64,000 nucleotides of DNA, taken from NCBI RefSeq assembly GCF_006345805.1, contig NC_042999.1:163618001-163682000 (forward strand), in the 5' to 3' direction. Every line of letters begins with the position of its first letter. Within the stretch, counting starts at the first letter, position 1. Under the pieces are notes generated by a model. That model ran no database searches, was not told where the DNA came from, and was given only the letters and a program-made list of their open reading frames with translations. Both the position numbers and the translations under genes were made by a program. Origin of the DNA: Octopus sinensis. Lineage: Eukaryota. This document shows, piece by piece, positions 10,394 through 60,944 of the stretch.

Positions 10394-10626
10394 TATTTCT
10401 TTACTACCCACAAAGGGCTAAACACAGAGGTGACAAACAAGGACAGACAAACGGATTAAGTCGACTACATCGACCCCAGTGCGTAACTGGTACTTAATTT
10501 ATCGACCCCAAAAGGATGAAAGGCAAAGTCGACCTCGGCGGAATTTGAACCCAGAACGTAACGGCAGACGAAATACGGCTACACATTTCGCCCGGCGTGC
10601 CAACGTTTCTGCCAGTTCGCCACCTT
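10394..10626 (-). mobile_element. tRNA-derived SINE (family B) with GCCC-TTTGT-GGGT 3' hairpin
   Basis: Minus strand reads ggtggcgaactggcagaa (A-box-like), gggttcaaattcc (B-box), and tail gccctttgtgggtagtaaagaaata. Confidence 0.85.
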
Positions 10627-11699
10627 AAATACACACCATTTACTGTTAGATGGGTTCACCCTTCGATTGTTTCATTTTTTGTCCTGCAGTATGTCCAACA
10701 AAACCCACCCTGCTTACCATACAGGCTTGGTAGGGTTGCCAGGTTAGTCGCCAACAGTTCGACAATGCGACAAGCTATATTGGGTTAAATGTTACTAGTA
10801 GCACTAAGCGTGACCTGACATACGTGCATGTACACATCATCTCCTAGAACGATAGGCTCTTGACCATTAAATACTACTTTCACTTCATTCTGGCCCTCAC
10901 TTCTCTCTAGCTATATGTTCTTGCACTTAACCTTCAATCGCTTCATATTCCCTATCGATTTACAGCAAGCAACTTGCTATAATCTTCATTCAACCATGTG
11001 AGGTAGGCACATAAATACAATCACTACATACAAAGGTATGTTACCACTTTAGATGTCTAGAAGTTGTCTCTCTTAAAGGTTTTTGCACGAATGACAAGAC
11101 TGCAAGATGAAAAAAAAAGGGCAACATATACATACATATAAATATTTCGAAGTATGACGTTTGTCTTTTATGTCTCTGAAGATGAGCAGATTTGCAGCTT
11201 CACTCTTTGATGGTCCTGAGGCAAATAATGACAACAAGTTTAAGGTTATAGTGGGCTCAATAACAGAATGAGGACCCAGCAGACTCTTGCTTTCTAGCCA
11301 GCTGTTTGATAATTTCTGATTCTGAGTGCTGTACTTCAGAATATTCAGTACAATGAGTGGTTTTGAGCAAAACGTTCCCTCAGTGAACTCTTCTAAGTTA
11401 TGATTTTTGCAGGTTTTCTTGTGAGTGTCTTTTTGTCTCCTCTGGTCCATCATGCTAGATGACCACAAAAGGGTCTGTTTAGGGAGTTTGGAATTCACCA
11501 TGCATGCGACATATCTTACTACAGTTGGAATTTACTTTTGAAAGCATACATGTTTAATTATCTGAATATTAGGAATTATATTCTGCCACTCAAGAAGTTT
11601 CTTCATGTGAGGTAAAAGTCAGGTTTCACGTCCTAAAGGTATTACAGTCACCACAACAGCTCTGTATATGCTGATCCAGTAGAGGGATCAGCTATCCGA

Positions 11700-13190
11700 A
11701 TACTCAGCACCCTGGTAGATAAAGTGATTAAGGATATGAAGCTAGGAAAAGTCCCCAGCCCATCAGGAATCACTGCTGTGATGCTTAAAACATCTGGTGG
11801 TGTGGGCTGTGGCCTAGTCACCCGTATTGTAGACCAGGTAGTTCATACCCAACAACTGACGTAGCAGCACCATAGTCAACTGCTACAAAGGTAAAGGTGA
11901 TGCTCTAGATAGAAATTACAGGGGTATCAAACTGCTGGATCAGGTGATGAAGGTTACGGAGAGGGTCATAGCCCAACTAATTAGGGAGAGAGTCTGCTTA
12001 GATGAGATGCAGTTCTGTTTTGTCCCAAGTAGAAGCACCACTGATGCCATATTCCTGGTACAGCAACTGCAGGAGAAATACCTAGCTAAAGATAAACCCC
12101 TATACTTAACTTTTGTGGACTTGGAGAAAGCATTTGACAGGGTCCCCTGATCCCTTATCTGGTGAGCGATGTGGAAACTGGGAATTGATGAATGGTTAAT
12201 AAGGGCTGTACAGACCCTTTACAGAAAGGCCGTTAGTAAGGTTAGGATTGGCAATGAGTACAGTGGAGAATTCCGGGTAGAAGTTGGCGCCCACCAAAGA
12301 TCAATCCTCAGCCCCCTTCTATTCTCATAGTCCTCCAGGCAAAAACAGAGGAATTTAAGACAGATTGTCCCTGGAAGCTCCTCTATGCTGATGACCTAGC
12401 CCTCATAGCAGAATCACTGCCGGAACTAGAAAAGAAATTTCGTGTGTGGAAGCTAAGTTTAGAATCAAAAAGCATTAGAGTCAATGTAGCAAAGACCAAA
12501 GTTATAGTAAGTAAGAAGGCGAACTCAACACACAGGTAGGTAGCCCTGCTCAATCTGTAGAAAAGGTGTAGGTAGAAACTACATAAGATGTACCCAGTGT
12601 AAGCTATGGACATATAAGAAATGCAGCAACATCAAAGAAGCTAGCTTTCGTGTGCAGCACAGGAGCAATAGACACCACAGATACTCAAAAAAAACAGATT
12701 CCATCAAACTCCAGGGGAAGAAACTAGAAGTATTTGATAGCTTCTGTTACCTAAGTGACCAAGTTGAAAGCTTCTTCCCCTACAGGTGACAAAGGGTCTC
12801 TCGCTCAGAGTGAAAGGTAGATTGTACGATGCATGTGTGCGAACTGCCATGCTTCACGGCAGTGAAACACGGGCTGTGACTGCGGAGGACATGCGTAGGC
12901 TCGAAAGAAATGAAGCTAGCGTGATCCGTGTCAGTGTGCACACACGATCAATTGTAAGTGACCTAAGAGAAATGTTGGATATAAGAAGCATCGCATGTGG
13001 CATGCAAGAGAGATGTTTGTGTTGGTATGGTCATGTACTATGGATGGATGTGAAAAAGTGAGATATGTGAAGACGTGCCACTCCCAAACAGTTGAAGGAA
13101 TCCGGGGTAGAGGTAAATCCAGGAAGACATGGGATGAGGTGGTCAAGCATGACCTTCGTTCGTTGGGCCTCACAGAGGCAATGATGATCA
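11700..13190 (+). mobile_element. Degenerate RTE-clade LINE, RT fragments
   Basis: Peptides MQFCFVPSRSTTDAIFLVQQLQEKYLAKDKPLYLTFVDLEKAFDRVP, LLYADDL and LYDACVRTAMLHGSET, plus the C-terminal RGRGKSRKTWDEVVKHDL motif; many stops and frameshifts. Confidence 0.9.
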
Positions 13191-13194
13191 TTTA

Positions 13195-13385
13195 TTCTAT
13201 CCATGGTGCTGCTACGCCAGTTGTTGGGTATGACTCATCTACAATACGGGTGACTAGGCCACAGCCCACACCACCAGATGTTTTAAGTATCTCAGCAGTG
13301 ATTCCTGATGGGCTGGAGGCTTTTCCTGGCTTCATACCCTTAATTGCTTTAATTACCAGGGAGCTGTCTATTTGTATTGTCACTC
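13195..13385 (-). mobile_element. Inverted copy of the 5' part of the same RTE fragment
   Basis: Reverse complement aligns to ~11705-11875 (KPGKASSPSGITAEILKTSGGVG). Confidence 0.85.
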
Positions 13386-14429
13386 ATGTTCGCTAACATT
13401 ATAAGTCCAGAGAAGTATGTTAGAAATCAGTATTTATGACAAGCAGGTTAGAGTGTCAGAAATGGCAAGAGCACTATATTGTAAATTGAAATGTTGTTCA
13501 GGTTGAGTTTTGGTACTCTGGAGAGATAGAAGGCACTCTTATTCAGAATTTGATTCTGTCTTATGTAATCTCACTCATTAGATTAATGAAGAAATTAACT
13601 ACAGGTTCCATAATGTAGGTAGTTTGTGGTGAGTTGTGGTTTCCATCATACCATTCTCCCTCTTCAATATACAGAGTTTTTCAAAAGCCATAATTTGTTA
13701 TTTTGTGAAATTGATATTTAATGAAAAGAAATTGTTATTGGTAAGCATGGCATTAAGTTGTCAAAATATAAACCAACATTGGATAGAATACATGATCTAT
13801 AATATTTATTCTGACACTGATGACGATGATGATGGTTGTGAGTTCAAATCCTGCCAGAACTTTGGTTTTCTTTCAGATGGGTGTGTTTTTGAAAATAAAT
13901 AATAATAATACACTTCCTTTTTTTTTTCAGGAATAGGCATCATGACAAATCAAAAGAATTTATTATATAAATACAATTTCCATGTACAATCATATTTGCA
14001 TTTATTTTGCCTACCTTGCTTTAAAGCAAGGTAAGAACAATGAGCTTTGCTTAAGAGCCAGAACACACTGAATCCCAATAAATTGCTCTACCTATCACAA
14101 TTCTAGGTCATGTATGAAAAGATTAATGTTTACTTGGTACTAACCCGGTGCATCCAGTACATCCTGTCTACACTACTGCACCCCACATGTATTCTGATCA
14201 GTATTCTCTATACGAGGTTTTCATGATAAAATCAGATATTTTAATAGAAGAAATTTGCAATGAAAAGCAATATTGACACTCAATGTAAATTTATGTAAAT
14301 TTCTGCATATTCTTATCGAAGTGTAATTTTAATTCCGTGAATTTTGGGAGATTTTTTTCCGAAATTTGTTCCTATTGTGTTTTCAAAATTTGTAATTCTG
14401 ACAAAAAATAGAAACGAATTTCATTATAT

Positions 14430-15204
14430 CAAGCAGCGAGTCAGAATTCGAAGGATTTTCTACTGAAGACCTTGATAAATCTAACTCTATGACTGAAAAA
14501 AAAACCACGTGGTATTTGATAATGAATCTGATGTTTCATTTTCCGAAAGTGAAAACAGTGAATCTGAGAGCTCCGACACCGATAAAGAAAATGAATTGGC
14601 ACCTGAATGGAGTGAAAATTTAAAAAACTGTTTCTTTCGGTGATTTTTCTGAAGAAACTGGACCAAGCCACAGACTTTCCCAGAAGAGTAAAGCCTTAGA
14701 CTATTTCTTTTTACTTTTTCGAATGAGCCTATTTGAAATCATTACGGCGGAAACGAACCGTTACGCTAAATGTAAACAAAGCGAAAGAAAGGATAGTTAG
14801 TGGTATCCCAGAACCTTAGATGAAATTAAGACAATTTTGCCATAAATATTATTATGGGTATCAGAAAGTTACTCAGAATAAAAAATTCTATCGCAAAATT
14901 TTGTTGTATACCCAATTGAATATTAGCTAATAACCCATTTTCTATAGCGATGTTTGAACAAAATTTTAATAATTTTATATTTTGTTGAATTTACCTGCAA
15001 TTAGAGTCACTTTGTGACAAAAATTGTAGTATAGAATTGGTTGAGAACATTTCATTAATTATCTTCCAAAATCAGATTAATATTGATAAATAAAAAAGTT
15101 ATAGTTGTTTAATGAAACCAGACTAAATTTATGATTATGTTAGAAATTAATGGAAACACATAAGGGGTGTATTTTGGTCAGAAATATAGTAACGAAAGGG
15201 TTAA
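14430..15204 (+). mobile_element. piggyBac-family element remnant (5'-truncated, internally deleted)
   Basis: Peptide ALDYFFLLF...FEIITAETNRYAK...WYPRTLDEIK...INIIMGIRKL resembles the piggyBac transposase N-terminus. The right end reads ...AAAGGG|TTAA (15197-15204). No left TIR found. Confidence 0.7.
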
Positions 15205-59881: not shown

Positions 59882-60290
59882 ATATACATACATATGTACA
59901 CACACAGACACATTATATATATATATATACACACATACATGCTTACACACACTCACACATATATACATATCCAGGTGTATATATGTATATTGTATGTCTA
60001 TATTTCTATACAAAATGCAACGTTATTTTTTACTCATTTCCCCAAATAGATACACACACACACACACATCAAACTCCTCCTTCTCTCTCGCACACACGCA
60101 CCAACATGATAACAACACATACATCACGATCAAATACACACATATACACACACATCATTCTCACTATCACGCACATATACACACATATATACATCATAAT
60201 CATACGCCCATATACACACACATCCCTGTCTTTCACATACATACTAACACCATAACCACATATATGCACATCACATTCAAACACCCACTC
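59589..60290. repeat. (TA)n, SINE A head (59680-59812, minus), (TATC)n and CA-rich low-complexity block
   Basis: Direct reading. Confidence 0.9.
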
Positions 60291-60527
60291 GTTACCATAT
60301 TGATTCGAATTTCGAATCGTATCCAAATGCATGGAAACAATTTCGGTAATTTGATTAAAGCAAGGGGAAGCGTGGCCGGAAGATTAAACAACGATGTTAT
60401 ATAATCAGGTAATTAACTCGAGATCAAACTGCACAAAGATGGTAGATATTCACGAAATATTTCAATGACAACACTAAAAGAACCAATGTAAATTATTTGT
60501 TCTCCAACAATAATAATAATTATCATA

Positions 60528-60565
<38 letters not shown>

Positions 60566-60676
60566 TTGAAATCATCGCTTTTCAATATGCAGAAAGTAAT
60601 TTCATAAGCATACTAATTGTTCTTCGCAGAACTGCCATCATTGGCTTCCATTGTTAGATTTAATATTAAATAGGCG

Positions 60677-60677
60677 T

Positions 60678-60766
<89 letters not shown>
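60677..60766. repeat. (TATC)n microsatellite
   Basis: Direct reading. Confidence 0.98.
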
Positions 60767-60944
60767 TTGACAGACAGACGCAAGTCAAATGGGCTCCACG
60801 TAAGTTGGTATTTTTGTACGTTTCAAAAGTGTATATTGACAAATATTTTGTGCTTAAAAGTTGTGCAACAACATCCACTGTAAACCTTTGATAAATATCG
60901 ACACAAAATTTTGCCCCTTGTGGGCAAAATTTAAAAGAAAAAAT

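What the first reader, a model, noticed from the sequence alone, without database searches (positions are those of the whole stretch)
10394..60932. A covarying 3' stem-loop links SINEs, the ORF1-only element and the LINE neighbourhood
Seen, near element 3' ends: GCCC-TTTGT-GGGT (SINE, 10406-10418 minus); GCCC-CTAGT-GGGT (ORF1-only element, 19377-19389); TGGC-CTTGT-GCCA (56992-57004 minus); AGGC-CTTTT-GCCT (57647-57659 minus); GGC-TTTGT-GCC (57905-57915 minus). An 11-bp-stem version, AAATTTTGCCC-CTTGT-GGGCAAAATTT, sits at 60906-60932. The stems change compensatorily while the 5-nt YTWKT loop is kept. Known: eel UnaL2/UnaSINE1 use a 3' stem-loop for RT recognition. Inference: a three-tier system (autonomous LINE, ORF1-only element, tRNA SINEs) addressed by one RNA hairpin.
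Basis: partly seen in the sequence, partly recalled or inferred. Interest (0 to 1): 0.7.

Follow-up and report, generated by a model that had tools for sequence, protein, structure and literature searches.

The report
Shared 3' hairpin tail of octopus retrotransposons
A small RNA hairpin sits in a roughly 45-50-base 3' tail shared by octopus L1-like LINEs, an ORF1-only derivative and tRNA-type SINEs, so it is a new example of the known "LINE and SINE with a common tail" arrangement and probably shows which LINE drives part of the octopus SINE expansion.

Summary
All six hairpins are at the stated coordinates. As a loose motif (4-bp stem, YTWKT loop) they are not enriched: 38 observed against 72±8 in shuffles. 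What is real is the roughly 45-50-nt 3' tail they lie in.

I fetched octopod loci through protein look-ups. Autonomous L1/Tx1-like LINEs (ORF1, then ORF2 with APE, RT and zf-RVT) of Octopus sinensis, O. vulgaris and Argonauta hians end in the same hairpin:
- GCCC-CTTGT-GGGT
- GGCC-CTTGT-GGCT
- AGCC-CTTGT-GGCC

An A-rich terminus (AATAAAGAAAT) follows.

The window's ORF1-only element and SINE-A carry this tail. A relative of the ORF1-only element has a 14-16-bp target-site duplication.

SINE-B (TGGC/GCCA, AGGC/GCCT) links only weakly, through the (ATT)n-tailed LINE lineage.

Across 37 tails, 90.5% of stem cells pair, against 66% shuffled and 19-46% slid. Three of four pairs change on both sides. 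The independent events are few.

- The 56.9-57.9 kb hairpins belong to SINE-B copies on the minus strand, beside an unrelated R2/Dong-like LINE fragment.
- The 11-bp palindrome lies about 56 nt upstream of the ORF1 start of a 5'-truncated-by-window autonomous LINE, not at a 3' end.

Verdict: a new member of a known kind (stringent-type LINE/SINE tail), with a HAL1-like middle tier.

The parts
10394..10630 (-). SINE-A copy. Its 3' tail reads ...TTTGTCACCTCTGTGTTTA GCCC-TTTGT-GGGT AGTAAAGAAATA, with the hairpin at 10406-10418.
   Evidence: The tail aligns to autonomous LINE tails with score 60-66 against 12.8±2.2 in shuffles. Covariance-model hit at 43.6 bits.
15721..17319 (+). ORF1-only element, copy 1. 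It is part of a 2,063-bp tandem duplication inside the 134-bp satellite. Hairpin at 17296-17308.
   Evidence: It is 97.7% identical to copy 2 over 1,753 nt, flanking satellite included.
17784..19403 (+). ORF1-only element, copy 2. It has a 5' leader, a frameshifted ORF1 (17978-19329, with a CCHC knuckle at about 18659-18706) and a 3' tail ...TGTCCCCTCTATATG GCCC-CTAGT-GGGT AATAAAGAAATAGG. Hairpin at 19377-19389.
   Evidence: Homologous ORF1-only loci are L002 (intact 384-aa ORF1) and L004 2500-4187 (target-site duplication); there is no ORF2 in any of them.
51166..51383 (-). SINE-B2 copy with a decayed hairpin (AGGC-CGTGT-GACT) and an (ATT)n tail.
   Evidence: Covariance-model hit at 51177-51221.
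51430..51585 (-). SINE-B1-like copy in which the usual hairpin is replaced by TTGCC-TCCC-GGCAA before GATTTGAAACC(ATT)n.
   Evidence: This is a single copy and was not analysed further.
56960..57200 (-). SINE-B1 copy with tail ...AAAATTGC TGGC-CTTGT-GCCA AAACTTGAAACC ATTGTTATT. Hairpin at 56992-57004.
   Evidence: Covariance-model hit at 38.6 bits.
57620..57830 (-). SINE-B2 copy with tail ...GAATTTC AGGC-CTTTT-GCCT TTAGTAGAAAAG(ATT)n. Hairpin at 57647-57659.
   Evidence: Covariance-model hit at 35.9 bits.
57882..57951 (-). 5'-truncated SINE-B copy with tail ...CAATTGCT GGC-TTTGT-GCC TAGATTAGAAACC(ATT)n. Hairpin at 57905-57915.
   Evidence: The covariance model hit it (33.2 bits, E 6.9e-5) although it was not in the training set.
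60906..60932 (+). 11-bp-stem palindrome AAATTTTGCCC-CTTGT-GGGCAAAATTT in the 5' leader of the autonomous-type LINE. It ends 56 nt before the ATG at 60988.
   Evidence: -13.3 kcal/mol, z = -3.96. A similar motif at the same spacing occurs in L003 (CAAAATTTTACCCCATTGGGAG), and a CCC/GGG hairpin in L006. The covariance model hit it at 33.2 bits without it being trained on.
60988..64000 (+). 5' part of an L1/Tx1-like autonomous LINE of the L003 lineage. ORF1 runs about 60988-63180 and is frameshifted, with a CCHC knuckle. ORF2 (APE) starts at about 63220 and runs off the window.
   Evidence: tblastn gives ORF1 at 61421-63135 and ORF2 at 63220-63999, the latter 69.6% identical to the start of L003 ORF2. 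DNA identity to L003 is 71%.

Best explanation
The hairpin is the core of a roughly 45-50-nt 3' tail module of an octopod L1/Tx1-like LINE family.

Shown:
- The module ends the autonomous elements (ORF1 plus ORF2).
- It also ends a HAL1-like lineage that keeps only ORF1.
- It also ends SINE-A in Octopus, the Argonauta counterpart of SINE-A, and a second Argonauta SINE body.
- The module is a C/T-rich lead-in (TGTCCCCTCTATGTT), a 4-bp G+C stem around a CUUGU loop, then about 12 A-rich bases (AAUAAAGAAAU). These form the terminus or are followed by (AUU)n.

Inferred:
- The hairpin with its flanks is the site at which the LINE's ORF2 protein selects its template for target-primed reverse transcription. 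This is 'stringent' 3'-end recognition.
- The ORF1-only elements and the SINEs are copied in trans because they carry the same tag.
- SINE-B (GGC/GCC stems, (ATT)n ends) most likely uses the (ATT)n-tailed branch of the same LINE clade, the L003 lineage. The window's own LINE at 60.9-64 kb belongs to that lineage.
For: Autonomous LINE tails carry the hairpin:
- L004 and L005...TGTCCCCTCTATGTTC GCCC-CTTGT-GGGT AGTAATAAAA, about 220-240 nt after the ORF2 stop
- L007: GGCC-CTTGT-GGCT AATAAAGAAAT
- L003: AGCC-CTTGT-GGCC AATAAAAAGAATTA(ATT)n
- Argonauta: AGCC-AGGT-GGCT, GGCC-CTTGT-GGCT and GGCC-CTTGT-GGCC

The LINE is L1-like. ORF2 has Exo_endo_phos, RVT_1 and zf-RVT. Its best solved relative is human L1 ORF2p at 4e-62, against R2 at 1e-24.

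Tail homology, scored against shuffles of 12-14±2:
- SINE-A with LINE: 60-66
- ORF1-only with LINE: 52
- Argonauta SINE with an Argonauta LINE-type tail: 76

SINE and LINE tails change together between genera. Octopus has GCCC/GGGT in both. Argonauta has GGCC/GGCT in both.

Structure counts on 37 tails, with the SINE tails located through the SINE core rather than through the hairpin:
- 90.5% of cells paired, against 65.9±3.0 shuffled (0/500) and 19-46% when the partner is slid
- covariation score 0.581 against 0.205
- pair types GU/AU/UA/GC, GC/CG and CG/GC at three of the four pairs

RNAalifold independently returns exactly this hairpin.

Between the two LINE lineages, whose ORF2 proteins are about 50-60% identical, the 3' UTRs are otherwise unalignable. 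The invariant columns cluster at the hairpin.

The ORF1-only element is a transposed unit. The L004 copy is flanked by GGATGTGATATAATGA on both sides and ends at ...AAAGAAATA.
Against: - No experiment: binding and dependence of retrotransposition on the hairpin are only inferred.
- The stem is just 4 bp, and the tails do not fold better than shuffles.
- The independent compensatory events are few, roughly one each at pairs 2 and 3 and three or more at the outer pair. The rows are related copies, so the 0/500 shuffle figures overstate significance.
- The structure was read off these same sequences.
- The loop is not invariant: CTAGT in the ORF1-only elements, AGGT in one Argonauta LINE.
- SINE-B does not align significantly with SINE-A or with L004-type tails (score 14, p about 0.25). 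Its match to L003 (26 against 12.5±2.1) partly rests on the ATT repeat.
- No LINE with a GGC/GCC stem was found in the roughly 220 kb examined.
Confidence: 0.68

Rival explanations
1. The shared tail is real, but the hairpin has no structural role. Recognition, or mere inheritance, rests on primary sequence such as CTTGTGG and the AATAAAGAAAT terminus. The few complementary changes are coincidences in a short G+C palindrome.
For: - Tail energies are no better than shuffles.
- Only 4 bp are involved.
- Few independent events underlie the counts.
- The most conserved columns, C21, the loop, G27 and the A-run, are conserved as sequence.
Against: - Four different stems all remain complementary: GCCC/GGGY, GGCC/GGCY, TGGC/GCCA and AGGC/GCCT.
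- Sliding the partner by one column drops pairing from 90% to 44-46%.
- The one LINE with a changed loop (Argonauta, AGGT) keeps a perfect AGCC/GGCT stem.
Confidence: 0.17
2. SINE-B, which supplies three of the reader's five tail hairpins, is mobilised by a different LINE clade with AT-rich trinucleotide ends, for example RTE. On this view its GGC-CTTGT-GCC hairpin resembles the L1/Tx1 hairpin only by convergence or chance. The 'one hairpin' system would then cover only SINE-A, the ORF1-only element and the L1/Tx1 LINEs.
For: - SINE-B against SINE-A or L004-type tails is not significant.
- No LINE with a GGC/GCC stem was seen.
- (ATT)n ends are not specific to one clade; by my recollection of the RTE literature (Malik and Eickbush 1998, listed in PMC9115989's references but not read here), RTE 3' ends are AT-rich short repeats.
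- RTE is among the LINE families listed as recently active in O. vulgaris (PMC13282606) and is lineage-specifically expanded in octopuses (PMC8967140).
Against: - The L003 L1-like LINE ends TC-AGCC-CTTGT-GGCC-AATAAAAAGAATTA(ATT)n. SINE-B2 ends TC-AGGC-CTTGT-GCCT-AGAGTAGAAAAGA(TTA)n. The score is 26 against 12.5±2.1.
- The loop is identical, the TCAG lead-in is the same, and the spacing to the repeat is the same.
- The covariance model scores SINE-B tails at 31-46 bits, although they were in the training set.
Confidence: 0.25
3. The 60906-60932 palindrome is the stump of the 3' tail of an older upstream element, onto which the LINE landed head-to-tail. On this view it is not a feature of the LINE's own 5' leader.
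For: - L004 and L005 are head-to-tail LINE arrays in which a 3' tail lies 100-320 nt upstream of the next ORF1.
- The covariance model, trained only on 3' tails, hits 60897-60941 at E 6.6e-5, including the A-rich part after the stem.
Against: - Nothing upstream of 60906 resembles the tail lead-in.
- L003 has CAAAATTTTACCCCATTGGGAG at the same distance, about 60 nt, from its ORF1 ATG.
- Argonauta L006 has GTGCCC-TCTTT-GGGAA about 65 nt before its ATG.
Confidence: 0.3
4. The hairpins are chance matches of a very loose pattern.
For: The pattern class is not enriched in the window.
Against: They sit in homologous tails found in three species. The covariance model finds no other hit in the window.
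Confidence: 0.02

Closest known systems
Eel UnaL2 / UnaSINE1 and zebrafish ZfL2 (L2 clade, stringent type; PMC1636434, PMC4176376)
   Same: [quoted passage not shown] A stem-loop lies close to the 3' end and a short repeat or A-rich terminus lies downstream. Stem pairing matters more than stem sequence.
   Different: The LINE here is L1-like (APE, RT, zf-RVT and an ORF1), not L2. The stem is only 4 bp, with a CUUGU loop. The terminus is AAUAAAGAAAU, or (AUU)n in one lineage, not (UGUAA)n. There are no functional data.
Stringent L1-clade LINE/SINE pairs of maize (LINE1-1_ZM) and Chlamydomonas (L1-1_CR / SINEX-3_CR) (Ohshima 2012, PMC3472496)
   Same: An L1-clade LINE shares about 50-80 nt of its 3' end with SINEs. 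In the maize pair the tail carries a hairpin with compensatory changes in a variable stem and conserved loop and flank bases.
   Different: Those examples are in plants and algae and end in poly(A). This one is in animals (octopods), has no poly(A), has an ORF1-only tier, and has SINEs with a conserved central domain.
HAL1 ('half-L1') of mammals (Bao and Jurka 2010; my own knowledge, not checked here)
   Same: A non-autonomous derivative of an L1-type LINE that keeps ORF1 and the LINE's ends and has lost ORF2.
   Different: Here the ORF1 of the ORF1-only lineage is only 34-36% identical to the ORF1 of the sampled autonomous LINEs, and 42-49% identical within the lineage. It is therefore an old, separate lineage, tagged by a specific 3' hairpin tail rather than by poly(A).
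Tx1-clade LINEs with target preference, and SINEU (Kojima 2015, PMC4494074)
   Same: L1-related LINEs in animals that mobilise SINEs. Many prefer microsatellites or other repeats. Some Tx1 copies carry small-RNA-derived heads like their SINEs.
   Different: Assignment to the Tx1 clade was not tested by phylogeny here. Target preference is only hinted at, by head-to-tail arrays, ATT/ATC microsatellites on both sides of SINE-B, and one ORF1-only copy preceded by a 35-nt SINE head piece.

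Membership tests
Stringent-type LINE/SINE pair with a common 3' tail (Okada model) | The SINE 3' end is homologous to the 3' end of a LINE of the same genome or lineage. | tested here: met
   SINE-A against LINE tails scores 60-66 against 12.8±2.2. The Argonauta SINE against an Argonauta LINE-type tail scores 76. See also alignment A1. For SINE-B the link is weak: 26 against 12.5±2.1, repeat included.
Stringent-type LINE/SINE pair with a common 3' tail (Okada model) | The partner LINE is autonomous, with an endonuclease and a reverse transcriptase. 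| tested here: met
   L003, L004, L005 and L006 carry ORF1 and ORF2 with Exo_endo_phos, RVT_1 and zf-RVT. L005 has a 1005-aa open ORF2 segment. In the window only the 5' 3 kb of such a LINE is present.
Stringent-type LINE/SINE pair with a common 3' tail (Okada model) | A conserved 3' stem-loop whose pairing is kept through changes on both sides. | tested here: met
   90.5% of cells are paired, and 3 of 4 pairs change on both sides. Caveats: few independent events, and the structure was derived from the same sequences.
Stringent-type LINE/SINE pair with a common 3' tail (Okada model) | The tail is required for retrotransposition or bound by the LINE protein. | not testable with these tools
   This needs a retrotransposition or binding assay.
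L1 / Tx1 group of non-LTR retrotransposons | ORF2 with an N-terminal APE-type endonuclease, an RT and a C-terminal zinc-binding domain, closest to L1 ORF2p. | tested here: met
   Pfam finds PF03372, PF00078 and PF13966. In the PDB search L1 ORF2p scores 4e-62 over 730 residues, against R2 at 1e-24.
L1 / Tx1 group of non-LTR retrotransposons | Placement inside the Tx1 clade by RT phylogeny (RTclass1 or equivalent). | not tested
   No reference set of clade RTs was available. O. vulgaris is reported to have 13 recently active L1-Tx1 families (PMC13282606).
HAL1-like ORF1-only non-autonomous LINE | Encodes ORF1 only, keeps the LINE 3' end, and is dispersed with target-site duplications. | tested here: met
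   There are three loci: the window (one insertion, duplicated), L002 (intact 384-aa ORF1) and L004 2500-4187 (14-16-bp TSD). tblastn finds no ORF2 between ORF1 and the tail. Genome-wide copy number is unknown.
UnaL2/L2-clade stem-loop family | The LINE belongs to the L2 clade and the tail is homologous to the UnaL2/ZfL2 tail. | tested here: not met
   ORF2 is L1-like. The hairpin, a 4-bp stem with a CUUGU loop, and the terminus differ. It is an analogue only.
tRNA-derived SINE | The head is recognisable as a tRNA. | tested here: not met
   ARAGORN finds no tRNA in the window. Rfam gives no match at E<=1 on 10380-10650. Literature describes octopus OR1/OR2 as tRNA-derived CORE-SINEs (PMC4824008, PMC4758252). 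The head has a B-box-like GAGTTCAAATTCC by eye.

The most novel reading that the evidence does not exclude
The autonomous LINE carries the same hairpin at both ends. A long-stem CUUGU hairpin lies about 56-65 nt upstream of ORF1 in the window, with weaker versions in O. sinensis and Argonauta, and the short hairpin lies in the 3' tail. If the LINE protein binds both, the 5' copy could mark full-length RNA, help template switching at the 5' end, or seed the head-to-tail LINE arrays seen in L004 and L005. Together with a long-lived ORF1-only lineage that may supply or consume ORF1 protein, this would be a layered parasitic hierarchy addressed by one RNA tag. No such system has been described in animals' L1-type elements.
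Probability: 0.1. Interest if true: 0.7.

Novelty: new member of a known kind. Interest (0 to 1): 0.45.

Why it matters
SINEs make up about a tenth of octopus genomes, and their expansion is one of the striking features of these genomes. None of the papers I could search names the LINE that copies them.

The tail identity found here points to L1/Tx1-like LINEs as the drivers of at least SINE-A. It also gives a defined 45-nt RNA element to test.

It would add an animal example of 'stringent' 3'-end recognition inside the L1 group, which is usually thought of through the relaxed, poly(A)-dependent mammalian L1. It also shows an invertebrate counterpart of the mammalian ORF1-only HAL1 elements.

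The concept itself is established: LINE and SINE with a common tail, a 3' stem-loop, and compensatory stem changes.

Tried and rejected
- The word-indexed protein search with the ORF1 found nothing. The exhaustive representative search found 276 relatives, and those ids were accepted by the contig look-up.
- Two look-ups (P0124, P0126) had no record.
- Three short metagenome contigs gave little. L052 and L053 do not reach the tail, and L051 has only a decayed tail.
It found only the conserved central domain in SINE-like repeats of other animals, plus chance hits.
- L001 (O. bimaculoides) held only the 5' part of the R2/Dong-like LINE, so that LINE's own 3' end could be read only in the window.
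- I considered CCCC-TAGC-GGG followed by (ATT)3 at about 52301 (-) as another tail. I rejected it because the similarity between the window and L001 continues through and past the ATT run, so it is internal to another element.
- I considered GCC-CATGT-GGC CAAGAG(ATT)n at about 55103-55130 (-) as an L003-type tail. The covariance model did not reach E<=1, so it is left open.
- I considered that the 134-bp satellite derives from the ORF1-only element. I rejected this because the L002 and L004 copies have no satellite flanks.
- Folding energy was tried as evidence and rejected as uninformative.

Full report
**What is in the window**

The window is octopod DNA. Its repeats match O. bimaculoides, O. 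sinensis and O. vulgaris loci at 65-93% identity.

A seventh, identical to the one at 19377, is at 17296-17308.

A blastn search with the SINE copies finds seven copies, all on the minus strand. They fall into two tail types.
- SINE-A is the copy at 10394-10630. It ends ...GTTTA GCCC-TTTGT-GGGT AGTAAAGAAATA.
- SINE-B is the other six copies: 51166-51383, 51430-51585, 56780-56907, 56960-57200, 57620-57830 and 57882-57951. It ends ...AAATT(G/T)C (T/A)GGC-CTTGT-GCC(A/T) ... GAAA.. (ATT)n.

**Chance**

As a pattern, a 4-bp stem with a YTWKT loop is not enriched. With G-U allowed there are 38 against 72±8 in shuffles. With Watson-Crick pairs only there are 18 against 14.5±3.6.

The tails do not fold better than shuffles. 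Only the 11-bp palindrome does, at z = -3.96.

The case therefore rests on homology and co-variation, not on motif counts or energy.

**The ORF1-only element**

The stretch 17784-19403 holds a roughly 190-nt leader, a frameshifted ORF1 with a CCHC knuckle (Pfam weak) and a roughly 300-nt 3' UTR ending in the hairpin and AATAAAGAAATAGG.

The copy at 15721-17319 is not a second insertion. The two are 97.7% identical over 1,753 nt including flanking satellite, so this is a 2,063-bp tandem duplication inside a 28-kb array of 134-bp repeats.

The ORF1 has 276 relatives in the exhaustive search. Two of the related loci, both in O. sinensis, are also ORF1-only.
- L002 has an intact 384-aa ORF1 at 9575-10729. 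Its tail follows about 310 nt later, and then a SINE.
- L004 2500-4187 has ORF1 similarity at 2723-3499 and the tail GCCC-CTAGT-GGGT AATAAAGAAATA. It is flanked on both sides by GGATGTGATATAATGA, a 14-16-bp target-site duplication.

Within this lineage the ORF1 proteins are 42-49% identical. They are 34-36% identical to the ORF1 of the autonomous elements. This is an old lineage of its own, comparable to the mammalian HAL1.

**The autonomous LINE**

The ORFs at 61067-63180 are the ORF1 of a second element. ORF2 begins at about 63220 and runs off the window. It is 69.6% identical to the start of ORF2 of the O. sinensis element L003.

Full-length relatives were fetched from three species:
- L003 and L004 (O. 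sinensis)
- L005 (O. vulgaris)
- L006 (Argonauta hians)

L007 (O. sinensis) covers only the ORF2 C-terminal part and the 3' end.

ORF2 has APE, RT and zf-RVT domains. It is closest to human L1 ORF2p, at 4e-62 against 1e-24 for R2. The family is therefore L1/Tx1-like. Clade phylogeny was not done.

Their 3' ends are:
- L004 and L005...TGTCCCCTCT(A/T)TGTT(C/G/T) GCCC-CTTGT-GGGT A(A/G)TAATAAAA
- L007: GGCC-CTTGT-GGCT AATAAAGAAAT
- L003: AGCC-CTTGT-GGCC AATAAAAAGAATTA(ATT)n
- Argonauta: AGCC-AGGT-GGCT AAGAAAGAAAT on the LINE itself, with two further LINE-type tails nearby, GGCC-CTTGT-GGCT and GGCC-CTTGT-GGCC

So an autonomous LINE does end in this hairpin.

**The shared tail**

Local alignments scored against 2,000 shuffles, which average 12-14±2:
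- SINE-A with L004 and L007 LINE tails: 60 and 66
- SINE-A with the ORF1-only element: 62
- ORF1-only element with LINE: 52
- Argonauta SINE with an Argonauta LINE-type tail: 76

The shared stretch is about 25 nt before the stem, the 13-nt hairpin and about 12 nt after it.

SINE and LINE tails change together between genera. Octopus has GCCC/GGGT in both. Argonauta has GGCC/GGCT in both. A second Argonauta SINE, with a different body, carries the same tail.

SINE-B is different. It does not align with SINE-A or with L004-type tails (score 14, p about 0.25). It does align with the L003 tail:
- L003: TC-AGCC-CTTGT-GGCC-A.ATA.AAAAGAATTA(ATT)n
- SINE-B2: TC-AGGC-CTTGT-GCCT-AGAGTAGAAAAGA(TTA)n

That score is 26 against 12.5±2.1, partly owing to the repeat.

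**Co-variation**

I aligned 37 tails. There were 13 LINE and ORF1-only tails and 24 SINE tails. The SINE tails were located through the SINE core, so decayed copies are included.

For the 4-bp helix:
- 90.5% of cells pair, against 65.9±3.0 after shuffling (0/500) and 19-46% when the partner is slid by 1-3 columns.
- The covariation score is 0.581 against 0.205.
- The outer pair is GU 20, AU 7, UA 5, GC 3.
- The second pair from the outside is GC 20, CG 11.
- The third pair from the outside is CG 23, GC 10.
- The pair closing the loop is CG 32, UG 2.

RNAalifold on the same alignment returns exactly this helix.

Caveats: the rows are related copies. I count only about five or more independent changes that keep pairing. 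The helix was read off these sequences.

Between the L003/L006 lineage and the L004/L005/L007 lineage the 3' UTRs are otherwise unalignable. The invariant columns cluster at the hairpin.

Model R1 gives 48 hits in 221 kb of octopod DNA. Every hit examined lies at a LINE, ORF1-only or SINE 3' end, apart from the 60897-60941 hit in the LINE 5' leader. There are eight hits in the window and nothing else at E<=1. Two were not in the training set, 57888-57932 and 60897-60941.

1. The hairpins at 56992, 57647 and 57905 belong to SINE-B copies on the minus strand. The LINE beside them is on the plus strand. Its RT is at 53335-54066, and its C-terminal piece NRPDIIIDK...IGALG...LLGTARI is at 57200-57510. 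Its RT relatives are nearer to R2 (3e-22) than to L1 (1e-11), so it is an R2/Dong-like element. It merely shares a TAA/TTA microsatellite with a SINE-B tail.
2. The 11-bp palindrome ends 56 nt before the ATG at 60988, which aligns with the L003 ORF1 ATG. L003 has CAAAATTTTACCCCATTGGGAG at the same spacing. Argonauta has GTGCCC-TCTTT-GGGAA about 65 nt before its ATG. I read it as a 5'-leader feature that resembles the 3' hairpin. The alternative, a stump of an upstream tail, is not excluded (0.3), because L004 and L005 are head-to-tail arrays.
3. ARAGORN and Rfam do not recognise the SINE head as a tRNA.

**Mechanism**

Shown: one tail module ends three classes of element in three octopod species, and one ORF1-only copy is a bona fide insertion with a target-site duplication.

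Inferred: the module is the template tag read by the LINE's ORF2 protein at the start of target-primed reverse transcription. This is the established mechanism for UnaL2/ZfL2 (PMC1636434, PMC4176376) and was proposed for a maize L1 lineage on the same kind of evidence (PMC3472496). The non-autonomous elements would ride on it.

**Comparison and novelty**

In concept it works like UnaL2/UnaSINE1 but is not a member of that family. It is closest to the stringent L1-clade pairs of maize and Chlamydomonas, with a HAL1-like middle tier.

L1-Tx1 LINEs are listed among the recently active families in O. vulgaris (PMC13282606) and in coleoids generally (PMC8967140). In the papers I could search I found no statement of which LINE mobilises octopus SINEs, and none about this hairpin. 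Repbase could not be consulted.

I rate it a new member of a known kind, with interest 0.45.

Noticed in passing
window 15535-43333: A roughly 28-kb array of a 132-134-bp satellite (unit ...TTCCTTCGATACTGGCTCTTTGGTTCACTGAC...). Its orientation flips near 27,950. The ORF1-only element sits inside it as part of a 2,063-bp higher-order duplication. A solo piece of the element's 5' end lies at about 20100-20160.
   Followed up: partly
window 43401-49376: Two 418-bp repeats (43401-44238) are followed by rDNA pieces: 5.8S at 45531-45689 and two partial 28S segments at 46034-46606 and 47625-49376 (model positions 1456-1888 and 2389-3399). No 18S lies upstream and the first about 1450 positions of 28S are missing. 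This looks like a rearranged or pseudogenised rDNA unit next to the satellite, which may be spacer-derived.
   Followed up: no
window 52709-57510 (+): A decayed R2/Dong-like LINE. Its RT is at 53335-54066 and its restriction-endonuclease-like C-terminus is at 57200-57510. It is interrupted by SINE insertions at 56.8-57.2 kb, and its 5' part is 82% identical to L001 (O. bimaculoides). It is unrelated to the hairpin family.
   Followed up: partly
window 8956-9369 (+), 55326-55729 (-); L001 3957-4360: A third SINE family of about 400 bp (GGCGCAGGCGTGGCTGTGTGGTAAG...CCTTGGGCAAGT...). It has a different, A-rich 3' end and no CTTGT hairpin, so it presumably uses another LINE.
   Followed up: no
L004 2500-20850; L005 4800-19300: Head-to-tail tandem arrays of the L1-like LINEs. 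In L004 an ORF1-only element is followed by three full LINEs and the start of a fourth. The 3' tail of each abuts the 5' leader of the next. This suggests insertion preference for the family's own ends, or for a shared target.
   Followed up: partly
L002 9423-9457: The ORF1-only element of O. sinensis L002 is directly preceded by a 35-nt piece of the SINE head (GGCGGCGTTGAGCTGGCAGAAACGTTAGCACGCC). This recalls the Tx1 copies with snRNA heads in crocodilians. It is a single case, and the L004 copy lacks it.
   Followed up: partly
window 51383-51430, 51585-51650, 57830-57880: SINE-B copies have ATT or ATC/ATG-type trinucleotide repeats at their 5' side as well as at their 3' end. This could mean a target preference for such microsatellites.
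   Followed up: no
window 51405-51440 (-): One SINE-B1-like copy has a different hairpin, TTGCC-TCCC-GGCAA, in place of TGGC-CTTGT-GCCA, before the usual GATTTGAAACC(ATT)n.
   Followed up: no
L006 213-257, 1947-1990, 5120-5164, 14230-14274 (-): Argonauta hians has a second SINE with a different body (...GGTTCAATC...GGTCCATTTATCTG...) that ends in the same GGCC-CTTGT-GGCY tail.
   Followed up: partly
P0271-P0275, P0277, P0279; L051-L053: ORF2 fragments 56-79% identical to the O. sinensis L003 LINE occur on short JGI and ENA metagenome contigs. One is deposited as a protein of a 'Herbaspirillum sp.' MAG. This is host (probably cephalopod) DNA contaminating metagenome bins.
   Followed up: no
L010, L011, L014, L021, L022, L025, L027, L033, L035, L038, L044: The SINE's central block TTTGCCTTTCATCCTTTCGGGGTCGATAAA recurs in SINE-like repeats of other animals found on metagenome contigs. 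Their heads and tails are unrelated. It is a deeply conserved SINE central domain.
   Followed up: partly
window 55103-55130 (-): GAGCC-CATGT-GGCC AAGAG(ATT)n resembles the L003-type LINE tail, but the covariance model did not reach E<=1. It may be a decayed, heavily 5'-truncated tail.
   Followed up: no
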